DNA from: Salpingoeca rosetta
Lineage: Eukaryota > Protista > Choanoflagellata
Direction of reading: 5' to 3'
Assembly: GCA_033442325.1 (NCBI GenBank)
Contig: JAWQFM010000005.1
Coordinates: 794,165 to 858,164, forward strand
DNA length: 64,000 bases
The position numbers were made by a program, and so were the translations under genes. Shown in pieces: positions 5,687 through 64,000 of the stretch (positions are counted from its first letter, which is position 1; each line of letters starts with the position of its first letter). The notes under the pieces are model-generated. The model had not been told where the DNA came from, did not search any database, and saw only the letters and a list, made by a program, of their open reading frames with translations.

Positions 5687-6838
5687 CTAGATCAGCATGC
5701 AGACCCTTGGCTTTGGTGCCGCGCCGCGTGCAGCACGGCGGCGCTGGTTCGCCCGCTGCACCACCAGCCGCGCAGGCGCAACCGCAACGCCCTGCCCCTG
5801 CAGCGACGCCGCCGTCACGTCCCCCGCCTCAACGAGCAGCTCAAGCATGTCAAACGTCTTGATGCCAAGCTGCGCAAACGCATCGTACACGTCCTCCAAC
5901 ACATCCAGCTCCGCCAGCCACTGCTCCAGGTCACGCTTCATCGCAAAGCCGCGTGGCGGTCCGCCTGAGGATGTGTGGCGTGCACCCTGCTGCCTTTCCT
6001 TTGCCGCCGCCGCACCACGAGGTGCTTGCTCCGCACCGCCGGTTGCCCTCTGGCTGCTGCCTCCTGCCTTGCCACGACCACGACCACGGCCACGACCATC
6101 AATACCCTCGTCACCACCATCACTGCCGCCGCCGTTCTCGGCGTGCTCCTCCCGCGCATTCGCCACGACCTTGCGCACCGTGTCCGCGTGCGACCGCAGC
6201 TGCACCGCCCGGCTGCTGTCGCCGCCGCCCTGCGTCCCAACGCCAACCACGGCGTCAATGTCAAACAGCGCCAGCACGGTCTCCCGCACACTCCGGTGCT
6301 TGCTGGGCGGCGGCGCGTGCAGCACTTGCGCAAAGTACTGGTCCAGCGACGCAGCCGTCTCCTTGCTCACGACGTCCGGTAGCGTCATCGCAACATCGCG
6401 GATGGCGCCAAAGGAATCCCCGCCCCCATCGCCAGTGCTGCCTTCCCCCGCGAGACGGCTGCCGCTGTCGCTGCTCGCGCTGGTGCTGTTGCTGTTGAGC
6501 CACGCGCTCCCCAGGAAGAGCGGCACAATGCGACGCAGCCGGACCTGTGCTGGGTCGTCGCCGTGTGCGTGCACATGGTCGCGCAGCGCCAGCATTGTCA
6601 TCCACTCCAGCAGCACGTTGTCGCAGTAGTCCTCCGTGGCCAGCGTCCGCATGCGCGCAAGGGCACCCGCGGAGACCACGGGGCAGGCCACCAGGCTCAG
6701 TCCAATGGCCGTCATGAACGACAGCTTGAAGTTGAGGCCCGTCTCCAGGTTGTTGGCGTCCAGAAACACCACCAGCCCGTGCTGCTCCAGCATGGGGTGC
6801 AGCGACATCACAAAACCGCTGTTGGCCTGTTGCCTGTG

Positions 6839-6891
<53 letters not shown>

Positions 6892-8848
6892 CATTGTGTG
6901 TGTCATTGTGCGCATGTGCAGGTGAACATCAAGCCTAACTCCATCAGTGATGGGACATCTGCACTCACTCACATTTGCGCACGATACATGCATCAGAAGC
7001 ACAGCCCTCTCCAACATTACACCCTTTTGCCCTCCCCCAACCTGTAGCTGATGAAGACGTCGTACTTGTCCTGCAGCCCGAGCATGGGCAGCAGCGGGCC
7101 AAACCTGGTGGCAAGCATCTTGGCAGACACAAGGTCCTCGTCCACCCACACGTCCTTCTTATTCTTGTGGTGCTGCAGCACGTCGTCGTAGTACAGCAGC
7201 GTTGCGTCATCGTGCGGCAGCAGCAGCCGACTCTGTAGGTCCGCGTACCGCCGCGCCACCGCCTGGCAGATGGTCGTGTACAGCGTGTGTAGCATGGCGC
7301 GCGGCTGCGCACTCGTGATCTTCATCTTGATGCCGCCAACAGCCGGCACAAGCTGCAGCTCCAGCTTGGTTGACTCCAGGAATGCAATGGCGTGCGTGCG
7401 GCTTAGCTTGGGCTCCTGTGATGCACCGTGCTGCGCATGCGCCATCACGTGGGCCAGCACAACGGTGAACAGTCCCTCGGGCAGGAACGATGCGTGTTGA
7501 ATGTCGTCCACCTTGACGCTGGCACCACGCTTGATATCCCGCAGGAAGAACACAATGAACGCCGTCTTCTCCTCGTACCCGCTGTAGGCGTTGGTGTGCT
7601 GCGCTGCTGTCGTGCTCAGCGACACCGCTGCTGCTGCCGCCGTTGCCTTGCCCTGCTTGCCCCCGCCACGAATCGTCATAGGCAGGATCGCAGGCACAAG
7701 AAACTGCTGTTGCTGCTGCTGCTGCTCATTGCGGGCACGCCGCTTGCCTGCCTTGCCACTGCGCTGTGCACCGTGACCAGAGTTGCCGCCGCCGCTGCTG
7801 CTGTTTGCACCATTCCTGCCTTCCATCAGCTTGGGCGGGGTGTACTCGATGCACAGCCCGTACCGCATCATGAGGCGCAGAAACGGCACCACCAGCGCGC
7901 TGTCCATGTCCTTCCACAGCACGTCCAGCACGCGGCGGTGCAGGATGCCCGCGTGGATGAGGTCGCTCCACAGCTCCGTGCCGAGCCGCAGTGCCTCCTT
8001 GTCCCGCACATCCCGGTGCAGGTCAAAGTTGCGGATGACCCGTGACATGGTGTCCACCGCCCACTGCGGGCTCAGGATCACGAAGTTATCCATGCCTTGC
8101 ACGCTGTCGTAGTACAGCACCATCGAGTAGAGGTGGAAGAACTGCAGGCATGCTTTCGTCTCCCTCCTTCCCTGCAGCCCACACGTGCGCGCAATCTCCA
8201 CCACCTCATCGAGCGTGAGCAGCGGGCTGCCCTGCTCCTTGCCAACCTGCATCAGCTTATCGTAGAGGTGGAGGTACGGCAACGCAACCTTCTGGTTCAC
8301 GTACTCCTGCGCTAGTGCTGTGGAGGAGATGGTCTGGCGCAGGTCCTGTATCATGGGGTCGCTGATGGACTTGGTGTTGTCGATGGGCCAGAACCAGAGG
8401 TCGCCCTCTGTGTTGAAGACGACAGAAGGGAAGGCCGGGTTGCTGCTGAAGCGGTTGAAGAGGTCGCGCGAGATGTGCTCGTGCTGCTTGCGCTTCTTGA
8501 CGGCGTCAGCAAAAGAGCCCACCATCAGGATTGGGGCGCTCGTGGCGTGCAGGTGCAGCGAGGACAGCCAGTGGCCAATAAACTCCCACGTCTCTGTCTG
8601 CTTGTTCTCGTCCTTGCTCAGCAGGTCCTCCATGGAAAACACCAGCAGGTACACCGCGTACCTGTTGTTGCAGGTGCAGATGGGGTGGGTGAGAGTGCGG
8701 TGTGGGGTTGGAGGTGAGTTTAGTGAGTGGAGGCGAGGAGAGTGAGGTGAGGAACATGTGGGTGGAAGTGAGGTGAGTGAGGCGAGGAACACGTGCGTAA
8801 CGAAAAATGCATCAAACGCATGCAAGCAGGCACAGCTCATCCGCACAT

Positions 8849-8888
<40 letters not shown>

Positions 8889-9425
8889 GCATACGCACAT
8901 ACACACATATGCAATCACTCACTCTGTGAGGAAGAATGGGTGAAAGACGTAGAAGGTGGACTGGCCGCCGAGGTCAAAGATCTTGAACGTGACCTGCGCC
9001 TTTCCATCGCCAATGGTCGCGTCCATGTCCAGGTCGGCAATCGCCTTCTCCCACCCGTCGTCTCCCAGTGCCGTGTCAACGTCATCCTCCTCCTCCTTCT
9101 CATCCTCTGCACCATCACCATCACCACTCTTCATCTCGTCCGTTTGGGCCGAGCCAGGTCCAGTGGTGCCCGTGTCGTGTGCTTGCTGGTGCTTCTGCAG
9201 GCGCTCCTCAAACTTGCGTCGCGCTTCCTCCATCTTCTCCTGCAGCTCGGCGTCCATGCCCGCCTTTTGCGCCAGCGCCGTGTCCCGCAGACTCCGCGCA
9301 ACCTCAGACAGGCCCTCGTCAACTGCCTGCAAGCATGAGCGGTTGGCGTGGCGATGGCGATGGTGTGGGGATTGGATGGATGAGCGAACAGGGCACGTGG
9401 TTGCAGGGCATGTTTGCGTGAGTGC

Positions 9426-9503
<78 letters not shown>

Positions 9504-10446
9504 GTGTGTGTCCCGTGTTGTCCATGAGCATCAACATGTGCACGTGTGCCTGGATTCGCACGCGGTTTGTGCCTTTGACACAGTACTCACGGCTACAAGC
9601 ATGCGCACACATGCACACAGACATGCACACACACACACACAAACACACACGCACACATAACGGCACCTTCCAGTGGGAGACTTCCAAGGAGTCGAGGGTG
9701 ACGGCCATGTCCTCGGAGGCGGCGCCCTGCGTCGAGTGCTGGTTCTTGTTGAACGCCTTCCCCATGAGCGAGCGCAGCGTCGTCGTCTTGCCTGCGCGGC
9801 CCTGCCCGACCAGCATCAGCTTCGCCCGCGCCGCCATCTGCTCGTCGCCATTCTGTGCCATCGCTTGCATCAGCGCCTTCACCTCCTCAAAGTACTGCTG
9901 CCGCGCCCGCTCATCGGCCGTCTGTGCCGTGGTCTTCTTGGCGTCCTTAGTCTTTTTCTTGCCGGACTTGTTGTTCCCTGGGCCCTCGTCGCCTCTGCAC
10001 GTGACAATGATCAGAGAACGAGCGTGAGTGGTTGCTTGTTGGGAAAGAAATCAAAAAGTTGCCAACAGCAGGAAAATGAAAGGGGACCCCCCCCCCCCCA
10101 CACACACACACGAACGTACTTGTGCAGAACACCTTCGACGAGGGTTTGAAAGGCGGCTGAGATGTTGGTGTTGCTCTTTGCGCTGGTCTCGGCGAAGAGC
10201 ATGTCATGTTTCGCAGCAAACTTCTCTCCCTCCTCTGTGGAGACTTGTCGGTCTGATTCAAGGTCGCTCTTCATGCCCATGAGCATCAAGACGACATCGG
10301 GTGCAGCAAATTTCTCAGCCTCTTTGAGCCACAACTTGCGCACATTGTCGAATGTTTCCTGCATGAACAAGCGAGCCAACGAGCGAGGACACGTGCATCA
10401 GCGAGCGAGCCATGTGGTGTATGTGTGTATGTGTATGTGTGTGTGT

Positions 10447-10510
<64 letters not shown>

Positions 10511-11572
10511 ACACGGGTGCAGGGGGTCTTAGGGGTTTTGTTGTTGTCTTGTTGATGTGTCGTACCTTGTTGGTGGTGTCATATGCGATGATAACAGCAT
10601 GCGTTCCCCTGAAGTAGCTTGAGATGAGACTGCGGAACCGCTCTTGACCACCAGAGTCCCACTGTCAACATGGAACGGCCAGGTCTCAGCGTGAGTGGTA
10701 GCAGCTGGCCAGAGAAGCTGTTCGTCAGAAACGCTCCGAGAGTGGCCAGCAAGAGGAACAGAGGAGAGGAGGTAGAGCAAGGAGTCATGCATATGCAAGG
10801 AGGGGTCAGCCCACGTACGATCTGAAGCCTGATCTGCTTTCCGTCAACTTCTAGGACCACGGTTTTCTGTTTGGATGGGAGGCCGTTGGTGTGCGCGAGT
10901 GTGGTGGCGAGTGTGAGTGGTGGTGGTAGTGAGTTCGCGCGAATGGGCAGCTGTAGCAACGCAAGTGAATCGGGTGGTCAACAGGTCCTTTGATTGATTT
11001 GGAGACGGCAATAGAGGCCGCAGAGCGGTGAGAAACTTACAAAGTCGACGCCGATGGTGGCGATGTACGTATCGGAGAACGTATGATCCTAATGGAGACG
11101 TGGGCATGTATTGACCAGCGCGTATGAGCAAGTCAGAACCAGGACTGCGTGAAACGATGCAGCATTGACGCATGTGGACCACGCGAAAGCGAAAGGGGCA
11201 CAAGAAAGGGGCGGGGCGAGACTCACAACCCCACAAGCCAACCGAGTTCAAAGACGACAATACATACCCATGCACTCATGCAATATGCAGAAACACACAC
11301 ACACATACACTCACCGCGTATTGGATGACGAGTTGTGACTTTCCAACTTGGGTGTCTCCAATGATAAGAGTCTTGATGAGCACATCCCTGAGTGGGCACG
11401 CGGAAGCACAGAATCGATCGGATAGTGGCGATCGGTGTTGTGACAGTGAGAGGCGGCGTGATGTATGCAATTCCACACAAAGGAACAACAGTGTACACAG
11501 CAAGATCCAAGCACCCACGATGTCACCCACGATGTTACCAACGATGTCATCACCACACGTCACACACACACA

Positions 11573-11645
<73 letters not shown>

Positions 11646-11665
11646 CAGACTCACTTCGAAGCCAT
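5687..11665 (-). CDS. Roco-family fusion: Rab1-like GTPase - Roc - COR - TIR - SAM - CaaX (10 exons, ~1337 aa)
   Basis: Exons 11655-11665, 11315-11387, 11041-11088, 10819-10866, 10566-10661, 10120-10358, 9667-9994, 8923-9326, 7042-8661, 5687-6833; all GT-AG, phases match, total 4014 nt. Rab: GDTQVGKS, TIGVDF, RLQIWDSGGQERFRS, ETSAK. Roc: GQGRAGKT, STQG, FDLGGQ, HPFFLT. COR: FFHLYSMVLYY, ILSPQW, FLVPAILP. TIR: YDVFISYR..VFLD..DNVLLEW. SAM: LEQWLAELDVLEDVYDAFAQLGI. Ends CMLI. Confidence 0.85.
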
Positions 11666-12053
11666 GGCTGGTGGTGTGGCTGGCGTGTCGTGTGGTCGTG
11701 TGGGCTAGCTGGCTTGCAGGGGCGTGCGTGGCTGGTGGGTGTGTTCTGTGAAGTGCGCCACTTGTTGCTGGTCGTGTGTTTCGATCGATCTTGGCTTGGC
11801 TTCTTGATTGTTGTTGCGAAGGAGCGGAGCGAAAATCGTGCACAGCTTTGCGTTTCTTTCCTTCAGCGTTTCGTTGGCAGTGAACAGTGCTGACTGGACG
11901 CGAAGTCATGTGTGAGGTGTGATTTGGAGCGGAGAGGCTCGTGTATTGGTAAATGCATCAAGCAAGCAAGCACGCACCGCCAACTCAAACTACAGGCACA
12001 CACACACACACAGAGACAGAGACAGAGAGACACAGACACACACACACACGCAG

Positions 12054-12118: not shown

Positions 12119-14110
<1,992 letters not shown>

Positions 14111-14184
14111 TCGCGGATGTAGAGAAGTGATGAATGATTTCGTGTATTTTTCAGCACTCGACTTCCGCTGCAACAACCCACAAG

Positions 14185-14210
14185 ATGGCTGTGCGTCTGC
14201 ACGCATGCAG

Positions 14211-62396: not shown

Positions 62397-63599
62397 GTGT
62401 TTCTGGACGCCAACAGTGTTGTGACATGGGAACAAGAGGGAGCTGTATCTTGCCCACGAGGCTACAAACGGCCAGCACAACTTATTATGTTGGTTAGCGG
62501 TTGTGCTTAGAAGGCTTTGTTGTGTTGACTCACAACAAACAACCTGGAGACGAGCCTCAACTTCAAGCTGTCGTTCATGACGGCCATTGGACTGAGCCTG
62601 GTGGCCTGCCCCGTGGTCTCCGCGGGTGCCCTTGCGCACATGCGGACGCTGGCCACGGAGGACTACTGCGACAACGTGCTGCTGGAGTGGATGACAATGC
62701 TGGCGCTGCGCGACCACGTGCACGCACACGGCGACGACCCAGCACAGGTCCGGCTGCGGCGCATTGTGCCGCTCTTCCTCGGGAGCGCGTGGCTCAACAG
62801 CAACAGCACCAGCGCGAGCAGCGACAGCGGCAGCGGTCTCGCGGGGGAAGGCAGCACTGGCGATGGGGGCGGGGATTCCTTTGGCGCCATCCGCGATGTT
62901 GCGATGACGCTACCGGACGTCGTGAGCAAGGAGACGGCTGCGTCGCTGGACCAGTACTTTGCGCAAGTGCTGCACGCGCCGCCGCCCAGCAAGCACCGGA
63001 GTGTGCGGGAGGCCGTTCTGGCGCTGTTTGACATTGACGCCGTGGTTGGCGTTGGGACGCAGGGCGGCGGCGACAGCAGCCGGGCGGTGCAGCTGCGGTC
63101 GCACGCGGACACGGTGCGCAAGGTCGTGGCGAATGCGCGGGAGGAGCACGCCGAGAACGGCGGCGGCAGTGATGGTGGTGACGAGGATATTGATGGTCGT
63201 GGTCGTGGTCGTGGCAAGGCAGGAGGCAGCAGCCAGAGGGCAACCGGCGATGCGGAGCAAGCACCTCGTGGTGCGGCGGCGGCAAAGCAAGGGCAGCAGG
63301 GTGCACGCCACACATCCTCAGGCGGACCGCCACGCGGCTTTGCGATGAACCGTGACCTGGAGCAGTGGCTGGCGGAGCTGGATGTGTTGGAGGACGTGTA
63401 CGATGCGTTTGCGCAGCTTGGCATCAAGACGTTTGACATGCTTGAGCTGCTCGTTGAGGCGGGGGACGTGACGGCGGCGTCGCTGCAGGGGCAGGGTGTT
63501 GCGGTTGCGCCTGCGCGGCTGGTGGTGCAGCGGGCGAACCAGCGCCGCCGTGCTGCACGCGGCGCGGCACCAAAGCCAAGGGTCTGCATGCTGATCTAG
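62397..63599 (+). pseudogene. 5'-truncated inverted copy of the TIR-SAM-CaaX last exon of the Roco gene
   Basis: Near-identical to the reverse complement of 5687-6770. Homology starts abruptly at GTGTTTCTGGACGCCAACA; the insert carries in-frame stops; a residual 340-aa ORF runs 62577-63599. Confidence 0.8.
62417..62537. mobile_element. 121-bp solo-LTR-like (or MITE) insertion
   Basis: TGTTGTGA...TCACAACA termini. Flanks AACAG/AACAA correspond to the single AACAA of the empty site in the intact gene (5-bp TSD, 1 mismatch). Confidence 0.75.
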
Positions 63600-64000
63600 C
63601 GGCAAAGGGGAGGGGGGGGGGAGGAAGCGGAGGAAGGGCGTGTGTGTGTGCATGCGTGTATGTGTGTGCATGCGTGTATGTGTTTGCGTGTGTGTGCGCA
63701 TGTGTAAATGCGTGTTTGCAGTTTGAGGGTCGTCCCAAATGTTGGTCAACGCAGCTGTTCTGGATCGTGCAAGGCGACTACTTTGCATGACGTAACATGG
63801 CCCTGTTCACCTGCTCATTGCAGCGCCCAATAAATGCTCCCTCTAAACATGCAAGCAAGCTCGTATGTCATGTACTGTAACAGAACACACCACCACGCGC
63901 ACACACACGAACGCGCACACAACGCTCTTCGTCACCGTTGTGTTTGTGTCACGGCCTAGAATTCAAGGTTTTACCACAGCGAGCGATGATGGTTCTGGAA

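What the first reader, a model, noticed from the sequence alone, without database searches (positions are those of the whole stretch)
5687..11665. Rab-Roc-COR-TIR-SAM-CaaX: a dual-GTPase Roco protein
Seen: ten GT-AG exons splice into one ~1337-aa frame. The Rab exon ends mid-codon (CAC AA|gt, 10120) and joins ag|A GGC GAC (9994), reading in frame through a K-rich linker into a second P-loop (GQGRAGKT). The spliced Rab has no stop and no CC/CXC tail, while the whole protein ends in CMLI. Known: Roco proteins usually have N-terminal LRR/ankyrin sensors and often kinases; LRRK2 is recruited by Rabs and phosphorylates them in trans; COR domains dimerise. Inference: this is a Rosetta-stone fusion of the Rab-Roco partnership, in which two GTPase switches gate assembly of a membrane-anchored TIR enzyme. 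I do not know this architecture from the literature.
Basis: partly seen in the sequence, partly recalled or inferred. Interest (0 to 1): 0.92.

Follow-up and report, generated by a model that had tools for sequence, protein, structure and literature searches.

The report
Rab-headed Roco–TIR protein of a choanoflagellate
This is a real, transcribed Salpingoeca rosetta gene in which a Rab-like GTPase is fused to a Roc-COR GTPase, a probable NAD-cleaving TIR enzyme, a SAM domain and a lipid-anchor signal; it is an unusual early-branching member of a large family that looks like innate-immune receptors.

Summary
Observation confirmed. Ten GT-AG exons on the minus strand (11665..5687) give one 1337-aa frame ending in CMLI. 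Assembled cDNA contigs from two studies run exon 8 > 7 > 6 > 5 > 4 > 3 > 2 with the introns removed, so the Rab-Roc splice 10120/9994 exists in RNA.

The domains hold up:
- Ras/Rab, Roc and COR-A by Pfam.
- TIR by fold (Z 10.2 to RUN1 TIR).
- SAM by fold (top ~30 hits are SAM domains) and by family-wide Pfam hits.

The organism is Salpingoeca rosetta. The gene is not unique.
- It is the earliest-branching member of a family of 35 or more Roc-COR-TIR(-SAM) paralogues, most headed by LRR or ankyrin repeats.
- Two paralogues carry Rab-ANK heads.
- A Salpingoeca infusionum transcript encodes the same Rab-Roc-COR-TIR-SAM order.
- A paralogue's TIR made cADPR in E. coli in a 2026 preprint. Its catalytic Glu aligns with Glu1032 here.

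Roco-TIR proteins are already described. I found no paper on the Rab-headed form, so I rate it a new variant of a known kind. "Two switches gate assembly" and the LRRK2 "Rosetta stone" reading remain untested. The Rab G4 motif has lost its Asn, and there is no kinase.

The parts
5687..11665 (-). Whole coding region: ten exons, 1337 codons plus stop
   Evidence: Splice model and translation. cDNA contigs join exons 2 through 8 plus 14 nt of exon 9.
10120..11665 (-). Rab-like G domain (aa 1-172) in six small exons. Motifs: G1 GDTQVGKS, G2 T in ATIGVDF, G3 WDSGGQE, G4 GMKSD (Asn replaced by Met), G5 TSAK. No C-terminal Cys motif.
   Evidence: Pfam Ras 69.8 bits on exon 6 and 30.6 bits on exon 5. 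Motifs read in the alignment. 43-51% identical to Rab1/8/35-type domains.
9995..10119 (-). Intron 6 (125 nt), the join between the Rab and Roc parts. Donor CACAA|gtacgt, acceptor gtgcag|AGGCGAC.
   Evidence: Removed in contigs X4 record 14 and X8 record 20. The X16 depth in bin 9940-10139 (7.7) is about what its 75 exonic bases alone would give.
9829..9994 (-). Lys-rich linker followed by a short predicted helical stretch (aa 173-227)
   Evidence: Translation. No Pfam family.
8349..9828 (-). Roc G domain (aa ~228-520), split over exons 7-9. P-loop GQGRAGKT at 9807-9784, an acidic/coiled insert of about 110 aa (exon 8), G3 DLGGQ, G4-like SFAD.
   Evidence: Pfam Roc 30.0 bits (cut-off 27) on exon 7 and profile positions 51-77 on exon 8. 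Paralogues score 1e-15 to 1e-18.
7836..8276 (-). COR-A domain (aa ~545-691)
   Evidence: Pfam COR-A 59.7 bits, cut-off 35.3.
7089..7586 (-). COR-B-like region (aa ~775-940), assigned by homology only
   Evidence: Aligned paralogues and the S. infusionum protein give sub-threshold COR-B hits (17-22 bits, cut-off 27). The window piece itself has no hit.
6176..7067 (-). TIR domain (aa 948-~1175), interrupted by intron 9 (7041-6834). Putative catalytic Glu1032 at 6607-6605. Contains a Ser/Gly-rich insert.
   Evidence: VIA-align Z 10.2, rmsd 3.2, 142 aligned to RUN1 TIR; all of the top 49 hits are TIR domains. 55% identical to the cADPR-producing TIR of F2UB80/P0163, with Glu aligned to its Glu1118. 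Pfam TIR_2 reaches only 16 bits on the exon-10 piece.
5723..5935 (-). SAM domain (aa ~1256-1325)
   Evidence: AF2 pLDDT 89, five helices. VIA-align wide search: p73 SAM Z 8.0 / 1.8 A / 61 aligned, and about 30 further SAM domains including SARM1. SAM_2 hits in 16 of 22 homologous tails; the window's own tail reaches only E 0.095.
5690..5749 (-). Polybasic stretch plus CaaX box (…RANQRRRAARGAAPKPRVCMLI); stop at 5689-5687
   Evidence: Translation. CaaX-type ends also occur in relatives P0172 (CVIA), P0152 (CLLM), P0154 (CALM) and P0174 (CTIC).

Best explanation
This is a genuine, expressed Salpingoeca rosetta gene for a 1337-aa protein with the order Rab-like domain, Roc, COR, TIR, SAM, polybasic-CaaX. 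It is the earliest-branching member of a large S. rosetta family of Roco-TIR proteins.

That family is built like NLR or SARM1-type immune switches, with three parts:
- an N-terminal input module, LRR and/or ankyrin in most paralogues;
- a central nucleotide-dependent switch, here Roc-COR instead of NACHT or NB-ARC;
- a C-terminal TIR output.

Likely working (inferred): the protein sits on a membrane through its prenylated, polybasic tail. Roc-COR changes conformation or dimer state with GTP. This state, together with the SAM domain, lets TIR domains pack against each other. The assembled TIRs then cleave NAD+ through Glu1032 and make cADPR-type signals.

The Rab-like domain occupies the input position. 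Its most likely role is to couple the switch to something that binds or modifies Rab1/8/35-type GTPases on a membrane. It is less likely to act as a second, classical tight GTP switch, because its G4 Asn is lost.

Shown here: the gene model, the splice, the domains and folds, the family context and the conservation in a second species. Shown elsewhere for a paralogue only: TIR cyclase activity. Inferred: everything about regulation and membrane anchoring.
For: - Gene model and frame.
- Spliced cDNA contigs from two studies and minus-strand RNA reads.
- Domains.
- Family of 35 or more loci sharing Roc, COR, TIR and often SAM exons. Annotated members have LRR or ANK heads, and one has a PNP_UDP_1 tail.
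- Rab heads in further relatives. In L013 the Rab exon reads on into an ankyrin repeat within one open frame, 2484-2963. P0167 has Ras 6.5e-52 followed by Ank.
- The S. infusionum transcript ORF P0174 is colinear with the model over aa 5-1151 and has Ras 9.6e-66, COR-A, TIR_2, SAM_2 and the end CTIC.
- The Tara metagenome ORF P0235 holds Rab, Roc and COR-A without interruption.
- Trees put the window gene as sister to all other expanded S. rosetta members (SH-aLRT 98), with P0174 outside. The Rab-headed order is therefore probably ancestral.
- The paralogue F2UB80 (= P0163) TIR 1034-1255 is listed in the preprint's supplementary table (bioRxiv 10.64898/2026.04.20.719644) with catalytic Glu1118 and a 'yes' that I read as cADPR production; the text says activity depended on the catalytic Glu in all cases. 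The window TIR is 55% identical and its Glu1032 aligns with that residue.
- The nearest solved TIR folds are enzymatic ones: plant NLR TIRs, SARM1 and SPARTA.
Against: - No activity, nucleotide binding, prenylation or localisation was measured for this protein.
- Rab exons have roughly half or less of the read depth of the downstream exons in X16: about 10-18 against 22-41 on exon 7 and 40-140 further on. Part of the excess comes from paralogue reads and perhaps 3' bias, but a Rab-less isoform from an internal start cannot be excluded.
- The Rab G4 motif is MKSD, and in S. infusionum AYAD. How the domain handles nucleotide is therefore unclear.
- Pfam TIR_2 and SAM_2 are below threshold on the window pieces themselves.
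- A profile of the tail found no PDB sequence.
- The predicted Rab / Roc-COR complex gave no answer.
Confidence: 0.6

Rival explanations
1. Integrated bait. The Rab-like head is not a regulator of the protein. It copies a host target, as integrated domains do in plant NLRs. Bacterial effectors that bind or modify Rab1/8/35-type GTPases would act on the fused copy, and that event would release Roc-COR and switch on the TIR.
For: - The Rab sits where paralogues carry sensor repeats.
- Rab heads in two paralogues have a P-loop one residue short, and one has also lost the G3 Gln. The catalytic machinery is therefore dispensable while the fold is kept.
- The window Rab keeps the switch II Ser-Ser-Tyr segment and the F/W/Y effector triad (read).
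- The family is large and species-specific, as immune receptor families usually are.
- Choanoflagellates feed on bacteria (general knowledge).
Against: This is pure inference. No effector, no infection phenotype and no sign of diversifying selection was examined. The same facts fit a localisation module equally well. I found no precedent for a Rab bait.
Confidence: 0.15
2. There are two true GTP switches in series, and the fusion is a Rosetta stone for the LRRK2-Rab partnership: the GTP state of the Rab controls the GTP state or dimerisation of Roc-COR.
For: The window Rab has full-length G1, G2, G3 (with Gln) and G5 motifs. Roc has an intact P-loop and DxxGQ. The fusion is conserved in a second species.
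Against: - No kinase or ARM domain is present.
- The G4 Asn is lost in both the window protein and the S. infusionum protein. The Rab heads of the paralogues are degenerate.
- The complex prediction gave no answer.
- Roco proteins as a class have low nucleotide affinity and need no GEF (review PMC6337361), so a Rab-to-Roc relay has no known precedent.
Confidence: 0.15
3. Annotation artefact: two neighbouring genes (a small Rab and a Roco-TIR) that only appear joined.
For: X16 depth steps up about two-fold between exon 6 and exon 7. Run X1 has an unspliced contig over 9662-10412. No public protein matching this gene was returned.
Against: - Contigs from two studies remove intron 6 exactly at the in-frame GT-AG sites and continue both ways.
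- With the intron retained, the Rab would end in 37 unrelated residues with no prenylation motif.
- The same fusion is a single ORF in S. infusionum and, with ANK repeats, in two paralogues, one of them within a single exon.
- X1 is also unspliced over introns 1-4, so it looks like DNA or pre-mRNA.
Confidence: 0.04
4. The TIR is a non-enzymatic adaptor, as in MyD88 or TLRs, and the protein merely scaffolds other TIR or SAM proteins.
For: Pfam TIR_2 is weak. The TIR carries a long Ser/Gly insert of low model confidence.
Against: The catalytic Glu is conserved family-wide (nearly invariant E76 of alignment A1). A 55%-identical paralogue TIR is enzymatic. The best structural matches are enzymatic TIRs.
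Confidence: 0.08

Closest known systems
S. rosetta LRR/ANK-Roc-COR-TIR paralogues (for example F2UB80 = PTSG_12359, whose TIR was assayed in bioRxiv 10.64898/2026.04.20.719644)
   Same: Roc (with the same acidic insert), COR, TIR and SAM are homologous throughout. Identity is 52-70% over the Roc-COR exon and 55% over the TIR. Exon structure and the catalytic Glu are the same.
   Different: The head is a Rab-like G domain joined by a short Lys-rich linker, instead of LRR_6 and ankyrin repeats. The tail ends in polybasic-CaaX, which only a few paralogues have. The gene branches before all the others.
Salpingoeca infusionum EP00049_P000833 (P0174), a transcript-derived ORF of 1315 aa
   Same: The domain order is identical: Rab, Roc, COR-A/B, TIR, SAM, then a Cys-containing C-terminus. 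It is colinear over aa 5-1151. The G4 Asn of the Rab is also lost.
   Different: Only 38% identical. Its Rab is clearly Rab1-like (3e-65 to human Rab1A). It is not the exclusive sister of the window gene (AU p 7e-12); it sits outside the whole S. rosetta expansion.
LRR-Roc-COR-TIR proteins of animals, algae and bacteria (actiniarian 'NG1', PMC5094078; Aplysia ROCO-TIR proteins, PMC9334734; TPR-ROCO-TIR of Chondrus, PMC11378527)
   Same: A Roco core is coupled to a TIR output, and the proteins are discussed as candidate immune receptors.
   Different: None of those descriptions includes a Rab or Ras head, a SAM domain or a CaaX end.
SARM1 (ARM-SAM-SAM-TIR NADase)
   Same: SAM plus an enzymatic-type TIR with a catalytic Glu. 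Both folds match SARM1 domains (SAM Z 7.2, TIR Z 8.4). The likely logic is the same: oligomerisation brings TIRs together.
   Different: The domain order is reversed (TIR then SAM). There is one SAM, not two. There is no ARM autoinhibitory domain; a Roc-COR GTPase takes the regulatory place. Sequence identity is only 16-18%.
LRRK2 / LRRK1
   Same: A Roc-COR tandem, ankyrin/LRR heads in the paralogues, and a functional link to Rab GTPases.
   Different: No kinase, no WD40 and no ARM domain. The Rab is in cis at the N-terminus and is neither a substrate nor a recruiter. UniRef's label 'non-specific serine/threonine protein kinase' on the paralogues is a transfer error: no kinase domain was found in any of them.
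Plant TIR-NLRs with integrated domains
   Same: The three-part logic of input, NTPase switch and TIR; a large lineage-specific expansion; swapping of N-terminal modules between paralogues.
   Different: The switch is a Ras-like Roc-COR, not a STAND NB-ARC. TIR is C-terminal, not N-terminal. No evidence of bait function.

Membership tests
Roco proteins | Roc G domain immediately followed by a COR domain | tested here: met
   Roc 30.0 bits (cut-off 27) on exon 7. COR-A 59.7 bits (cut-off 35.3) on exon 9. The order is Roc then COR in one frame.
Roco proteins | COR-B subdomain that mediates dimerisation | tested here: inconclusive
   No COR-B hit on the window piece. Homologous regions of relatives score 17-22 bits, below the cut-off of 27. 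Dimerisation was not tested.
Roco proteins | Guanine-nucleotide binding and hydrolysis by Roc | not testable with these tools
   Only motifs were seen: GQGRAGKT, DLGGQ, SFAD.
Rab GTPases | Ras-superfamily G domain with Rab-type motifs (IGVDF, RLQIWD, RFRSL, YFRG) | tested here: met
   Pfam Ras on exons 5 and 6. Motifs read. Best PDB sequence matches to exon 6 are Rab2, Rab11 and Rab8.
Rab GTPases | Complete G1-G5 set, including NKxD | tested here: not met
   G4 reads MKSD, so the Asn is lost. G1, G2, G3 and G5 are intact.
Rab GTPases | C-terminal CC/CXC geranylgeranylation motif after a hypervariable tail | tested here: not met
   The G domain runs into a Lys-rich linker and then Roc, with no Cys. 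It is therefore a Rab-like domain, not a free-standing Rab.
Enzymatic (NADase/cyclase) TIR domains | TIR fold | tested here: met
   Z 10.2 / rmsd 3.2 / 142 aligned to RUN1 TIR; all top 49 rows are TIR domains. Foldseek alone was weak (E 0.2), and the model lacks strand A.
Enzymatic (NADase/cyclase) TIR domains | Catalytic glutamate | tested here: met
   Glu1032 in NVLLEW aligns with Glu1118 of F2UB80, the residue listed as catalytic in the preprint's table. It is nearly invariant across 24 family members.
Enzymatic (NADase/cyclase) TIR domains | NAD+ cleavage or cADPR production | not testable with these tools
   Reported only for the 55%-identical paralogue.
SAM domains | Five-helix SAM fold and profile match | tested here: met
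   VIA-align wide search: about 30 top hits are SAM domains, Z 8.0-6.2. SAM_2 hits in 16 of 22 homologous tails, best 3e-8; the window's own tail reaches only E 0.095. Foldseek found nothing significant.
CaaX-prenylated proteins | Cys four residues from the C-terminus, aliphatic a1/a2, often with an upstream polybasic stretch | tested here: met
   …RRRAARGAAPKPRVCMLI-stop. Prenylation itself is not testable here.
LRRK-type Roco kinases | Protein kinase domain C-terminal to COR | tested here: not met
   No kinase family hit on any exon at E<=1, nor in paralogues.
NLR / STAND receptors | NACHT or NB-ARC STAND NTPase | tested here: not met
   Only Ras-like G domains were found. The protein may work like an NLR but is not one.

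The most novel reading that the evidence does not exclude
[quoted passage not shown] On this reading, modification or capture of the fused Rab by bacterial effectors triggers Roc-COR-driven assembly of the TIR and cADPR signalling at a membrane. Because the Rab-headed order appears ancestral to the whole S. rosetta Roco-TIR expansion and is shared with S. infusionum, this would mean that guarding of Rab GTPases by a Roco protein predates animals. It would also give a functional root to the later LRRK2-Rab link.
Probability: 0.12. Interest if true: 0.85.

Novelty: new variant of a known kind. Interest (0 to 1): 0.55.

Why it matters
Roco proteins are studied mainly because of LRRK2 and Parkinson's disease. 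How their GTPase core receives input is still debated. TIR enzymes are now seen as an ancient immune output shared by bacteria, plants and animals.

This gene ties the two together in a choanoflagellate that can be genetically manipulated. It does so in a form where the input module is itself a Rab-like GTPase. It appears to keep the ancestral layout of a family of 35 or more members that looks like an NLR-style receptor repertoire built on a different switch.

That makes three questions directly testable in S. rosetta:
- Does a Roc-COR switch control a TIR enzyme?
- What does a cis-fused Rab do to a Roco core?
- Do choanoflagellates use cADPR signalling against bacteria?

Tried and rejected
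1. Profile of the TIR-SAM tail against PDB sequences: no hit at E<=1.
2. Foldseek on both models gave only weak rows: TIRs at E 0.2-1, and one SAM at E 7.5. The VIA-align runs were needed to settle the folds.
3. Complex prediction of the S. infusionum Rab domain against its own Roc-COR: no answer, score 0.00. This is not evidence either way.
4. Looking for this gene's own public protein. Searches with a paralogue (length range 950-3024) and with exon 9 (296-943) returned no protein close to 100% identical. The locus therefore seems to be unannotated or modelled differently in the sets searched. The word-based search makes this a weak negative.
5. Assigning the window Rab to one Rab subfamily. 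It is 43-51% identical to many Rab1/8/35-type domains with no clear winner. Only the S. infusionum head is clearly Rab1-like.
6. The window gene plus P0174 as an exclusive clade: rejected by the AU test (p 7e-12). I dropped 'one-to-one orthologue' in favour of 'same architecture outside and at the base of the expansion'.
7. Literature searches for a Rab-headed Roco, for a Rab bait in NLRs and for the accession of the annotated paralogue found nothing. The library lacks most subscription journals.
8. Mercenaria P0265 (Rab ... Roc-COR-Death) has more than 1000 residues between the Rab and Roc. I did not count it as a firm case, because it could be a merged gene model.

Full report
**1. What is in the sequence**

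On the minus strand, ten exons with canonical GT-AG borders splice into 4014 nt. They encode a single 1337-codon frame that starts at ATG 11665 and ends ...KPRVCMLI-TAG at 5687.

Domain profiles run across the junctions in register. The Ras profile continues from positions 53-84 in exon 5 to 85-160 in exon 6. The Roc profile covers positions 1-43 in exon 7 and 51-77 in exon 8. The first TIR strand (KYDVFISYR) closes exon 9 and the rest of the TIR opens exon 10. Chance open frames would not produce this.

**2. Is the Rab-Roc join real in RNA?**

I had one read-laying run. Two assembled cDNA contigs from different studies (X4 record 14, 1417 nt; X8 record 20, 1624 nt) lie on 8921-9325, 9666-9994 and 10124-10357 with consecutive record positions. 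The four unplaced letters between the last two pieces correspond in number to 10120-10123. The same contigs, at the same depths, carry the joints for exons 6-5, 5-4, 4-3 and 3-2.

So spliced molecules exist in which the Rab exons are joined in frame to the Roc exons. Stranded raw reads (X16) put the RNA on the minus strand. Depth in the bin that holds intron 6 (7.7) is about what its 75 exonic bases alone would give.

Limits of this evidence:
- The joint table was truncated, so I have no raw-read count for this junction.
- Run X1 is unspliced throughout and looks like DNA or pre-mRNA.
- Rab exons have roughly half or less of the depth of later exons (about 10-18 against 22-41 on exon 7 and 40-140 further on). 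Part of the excess comes from paralogue reads: many positions show about 50% 'other letters', and there are loose ends at 6579, 6631, 7041 and 8396. A minor Rab-less isoform still cannot be excluded.

From the contig lengths I infer a 5' UTR of at least about 155 nt. This is an inference, because the laid stretch ended at 11735.

**3. Domains**

- **Rab-like head (aa 1-172).** Pfam Ras scores 69.8 and 30.6 bits on exons 6 and 5. G1 GDTQVGKS, the switch I Thr, G3 WDSGGQE and G5 TSAK are intact. G4 reads MKSD instead of NKxD. There is no Cys tail.
- **Roc.** P-loop GQGRAGKT at 9807-9784, an acidic insert of about 110 residues, then DLGGQ.
- **COR-A.** 59.7 bits. COR-B is assigned only by homology.
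- **TIR.** The exon-10 model lacks strand A. Even so, a VIA-align second look at Foldseek's top-ranked chains gives Z 10.2 to the RUN1 TIR, and all of the top 49 rows are TIR domains, mostly enzymatic ones such as plant NLR TIRs, SARM1 and SPARTA.
- **SAM.** The last 92 residues fold with pLDDT 89 into five helices. An exhaustive VIA-align search returns about thirty SAM domains at the top, led by p73 SAM at Z 8.0, 1.8 A and 61 aligned residues. Sixteen of 22 homologous tails hit Pfam SAM_2.
- **Tail.** The C-terminus is polybasic and followed by CMLI.
- **Kinase.** No kinase domain is present anywhere.

**4. Context: a large family**

The organism is Salpingoeca rosetta (names). The window is C5:794165-858164 of a 55.4-Mb assembly. 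The Roc-COR exon has 35 or more paralogous loci at 45-70% identity. Most of them have matching Roc P-loop, TIR and SAM exons next to them.

Annotated members are LRR_6 and/or ankyrin heads followed by Roc, COR and TIR. One ends in a PNP_UDP_1 nucleosidase-type domain instead. The layout of input repeats, NTPase switch and TIR or nucleosidase output is that of NLR-like receptors, built here on a Roc-COR switch.

Roco-TIR combinations are already on record in several groups:
- sea anemones ('NG1', PMC5094078);
- Aplysia (PMC9334734);
- a red alga (PMC11378527);
- bacteria (mentioned in PMC5094078).

**5. Other Rab heads**

- **C11 paralogue** (P0167 = XP_004994429.1, named 'GTPase'). It is Ras(16-174)-ANK-Roc-COR-TIR.
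- **C6 paralogue** (L013). It has no protein model among those fetched. Its last Rab exon reads straight on into an ankyrin repeat in one open frame (2484-2963). More ANK exons follow before the Roc exon.
- **Salpingoeca infusionum** transcript ORF (P0174, 1315 aa, 'type:complete'). It is colinear with my model over residues 5-1151 at 38% identity. It has Ras 9.6e-66, COR-A, COR-B (weak), TIR_2, SAM_2 and the end CTIC.
- **Tara Oceans scaffold.** It holds Rab, Roc and COR-A in one uninterrupted 994-codon ORF.

The Rab heads of the two Rab-ANK paralogues share a P-loop one residue short. One has also lost the G3 Gln. Their C-terminal halves are 76% identical to each other, yet their Roc-COR parts fall in different subclades. 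This points to shuffling of N-terminal modules between paralogues.

**6. Phylogeny**

Two trees were built, one of the Roc-COR exon (41 rows) and one of Roc-COR-TIR (19 rows). Both place the window gene as sister to all other expanded S. rosetta members (SH-aLRT 98). P0174 and the SAM/CaaX-bearing P0172 lie outside.

An exclusive window+P0174 clade is rejected (AU p 7e-12). That is what one expects if the expansion happened after the two species split.

The simplest reading is that Rab-Roc-COR-TIR-SAM-CaaX is the older layout, and that LRR/ANK heads came later in S. rosetta. Long branches (P0174, P0010) make the deep nodes uncertain.

**7. Function**

A 2026 preprint (bioRxiv 10.64898/2026.04.20.719644) expressed TIR domains from many eukaryotes in E. 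coli. It reports cADPR production by a S. rosetta TIR that depends on the catalytic glutamate. Its supplementary table lists the construct F2UB80, 1352 aa, TIR 1034-1255, Glu1118.

That sequence is P0163 (PTSG_12359) of this family. The window TIR is 55% identical to it over 228 residues, and Glu1032 (6607-6605) aligns with Glu1118. The residue is nearly invariant in 24 family tails.

I therefore take the TIR to be an NAD+-cleaving cyclase. This is an inference from a paralogue.

By analogy with SARM1 and TIR-NLRs, activity should need TIR self-association. The SAM domain, Roc-COR dimerisation and the membrane tail could each promote that. None of this was measured.

**8. The Rab head**

The Rab head occupies the input position. 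Its full-length P-loop and DxxGQ motif allow nucleotide binding. Loss of the G4 Asn, shared with S. infusionum (AYAD), argues against a classical tight switch: in Ras and Rab proteins, changes at this Asn are known to weaken nucleotide binding (general knowledge).

I favour a role as a targeting or input module that engages Rab partners on a membrane.

A bait role, in which pathogen effectors act on the fused Rab, fits the family logic and the degenerate heads in the paralogues. It has no direct support.

There is no kinase and no ARM domain, and the complex prediction gave no answer.

**9. Verdict**

The finding is a new variant (a Rab-headed, probably ancestral member) of a known kind (Roco-TIR proteins, candidate immune receptors).

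Interest is moderate to good. The organism is experimentally tractable, and the gene links Roco, Rab and TIR biology. Set against that, one family member has already been assayed and the mechanism proposed for the Rab head is unproven.

Noticed in passing
window 62550-63650 (+): An inverted, truncated, roughly 98%-identical DNA copy of the 3' 1.07 kb of exon 10. It runs from mid-TIR (…NNLET…) through SAM, CMLI, the stop and about 80 nt of 3' UTR, and has a 6-nt in-frame deletion. It lacks the first part of the TIR and everything upstream, and no Roc-COR exon lies nearby. The longest ORF is 62577-63599 (340 aa, no Pfam hit). It is probably a gene fragment from a segmental duplication. At least one variant seen in run X1 (6457 G>C) matches this copy.
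   Followed up: partly
window 3680-5071 (+): A tail-to-tail neighbour: a 463-aa ORF packed with TPR_12/TPR_10 repeats (1.7e-119) that ends in CSVL, another CaaX-type end. The preprint's supplement lists TPR-TIR proteins in S. rosetta. I did not check whether this gene has a TIR exon upstream.
   Followed up: partly
G000 genome-wide (e.g. L002-L024): 35 or more paralogous Roc-COR-TIR(-SAM) loci on many contigs, some in local pairs (C4:74-76 kb, C30:19-22 and 56-59 kb, C36:39-43 kb). One member (P0002, PTSG_02681) ends in a PNP_UDP_1 phosphorylase-type domain instead of a TIR.
   Followed up: partly
L013 (G000:C6:1099500-1109400) and L014 (C11:185500-195400): The Rab-ANK heads of these two paralogues share a P-loop one residue short (GRDAGKT / GAVAGKT). 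They are 76% identical in the Rab C-terminal half, although their Roc-COR parts sit in different subclades. This suggests exchange of N-terminal modules between paralogues. No protein model for the L013 gene was among those fetched.
   Followed up: partly
G000:C26:706624-707130 (+), protein P0281: Another S. rosetta protein starts with a Rab1-like domain and ends with a TIR: Rab, PH, protein kinase, TIR (916 aa, 'TKL/DICTY4 protein kinase'). Rab heads on TIR proteins therefore recur in this genome outside the Roco family.
   Followed up: no
public names of paralogues: UniRef calls most family members 'non-specific serine/threonine protein kinase'. No kinase domain is detectable in those scanned. 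The name looks like a transfer from LRRK-type Roco proteins.
   Followed up: yes
window 12119-14206 (-): The upstream gene on the same strand is a 695-aa ORF with very long poly-Gln runs and a coiled-coil-like C-terminal half. Its stop lies only about 450 nt from this gene's ATG. The X8 cDNA contig may extend into that interval.
   Followed up: no
window introns at 11570-11650, 10440-10530, 9430-9510, 8860-8900, 6845-6900: Almost every intron of the gene holds a (GT)n or (CA)n microsatellite of 40-90 nt. The read tool masked them, which hid some splice joints.
   Followed up: no
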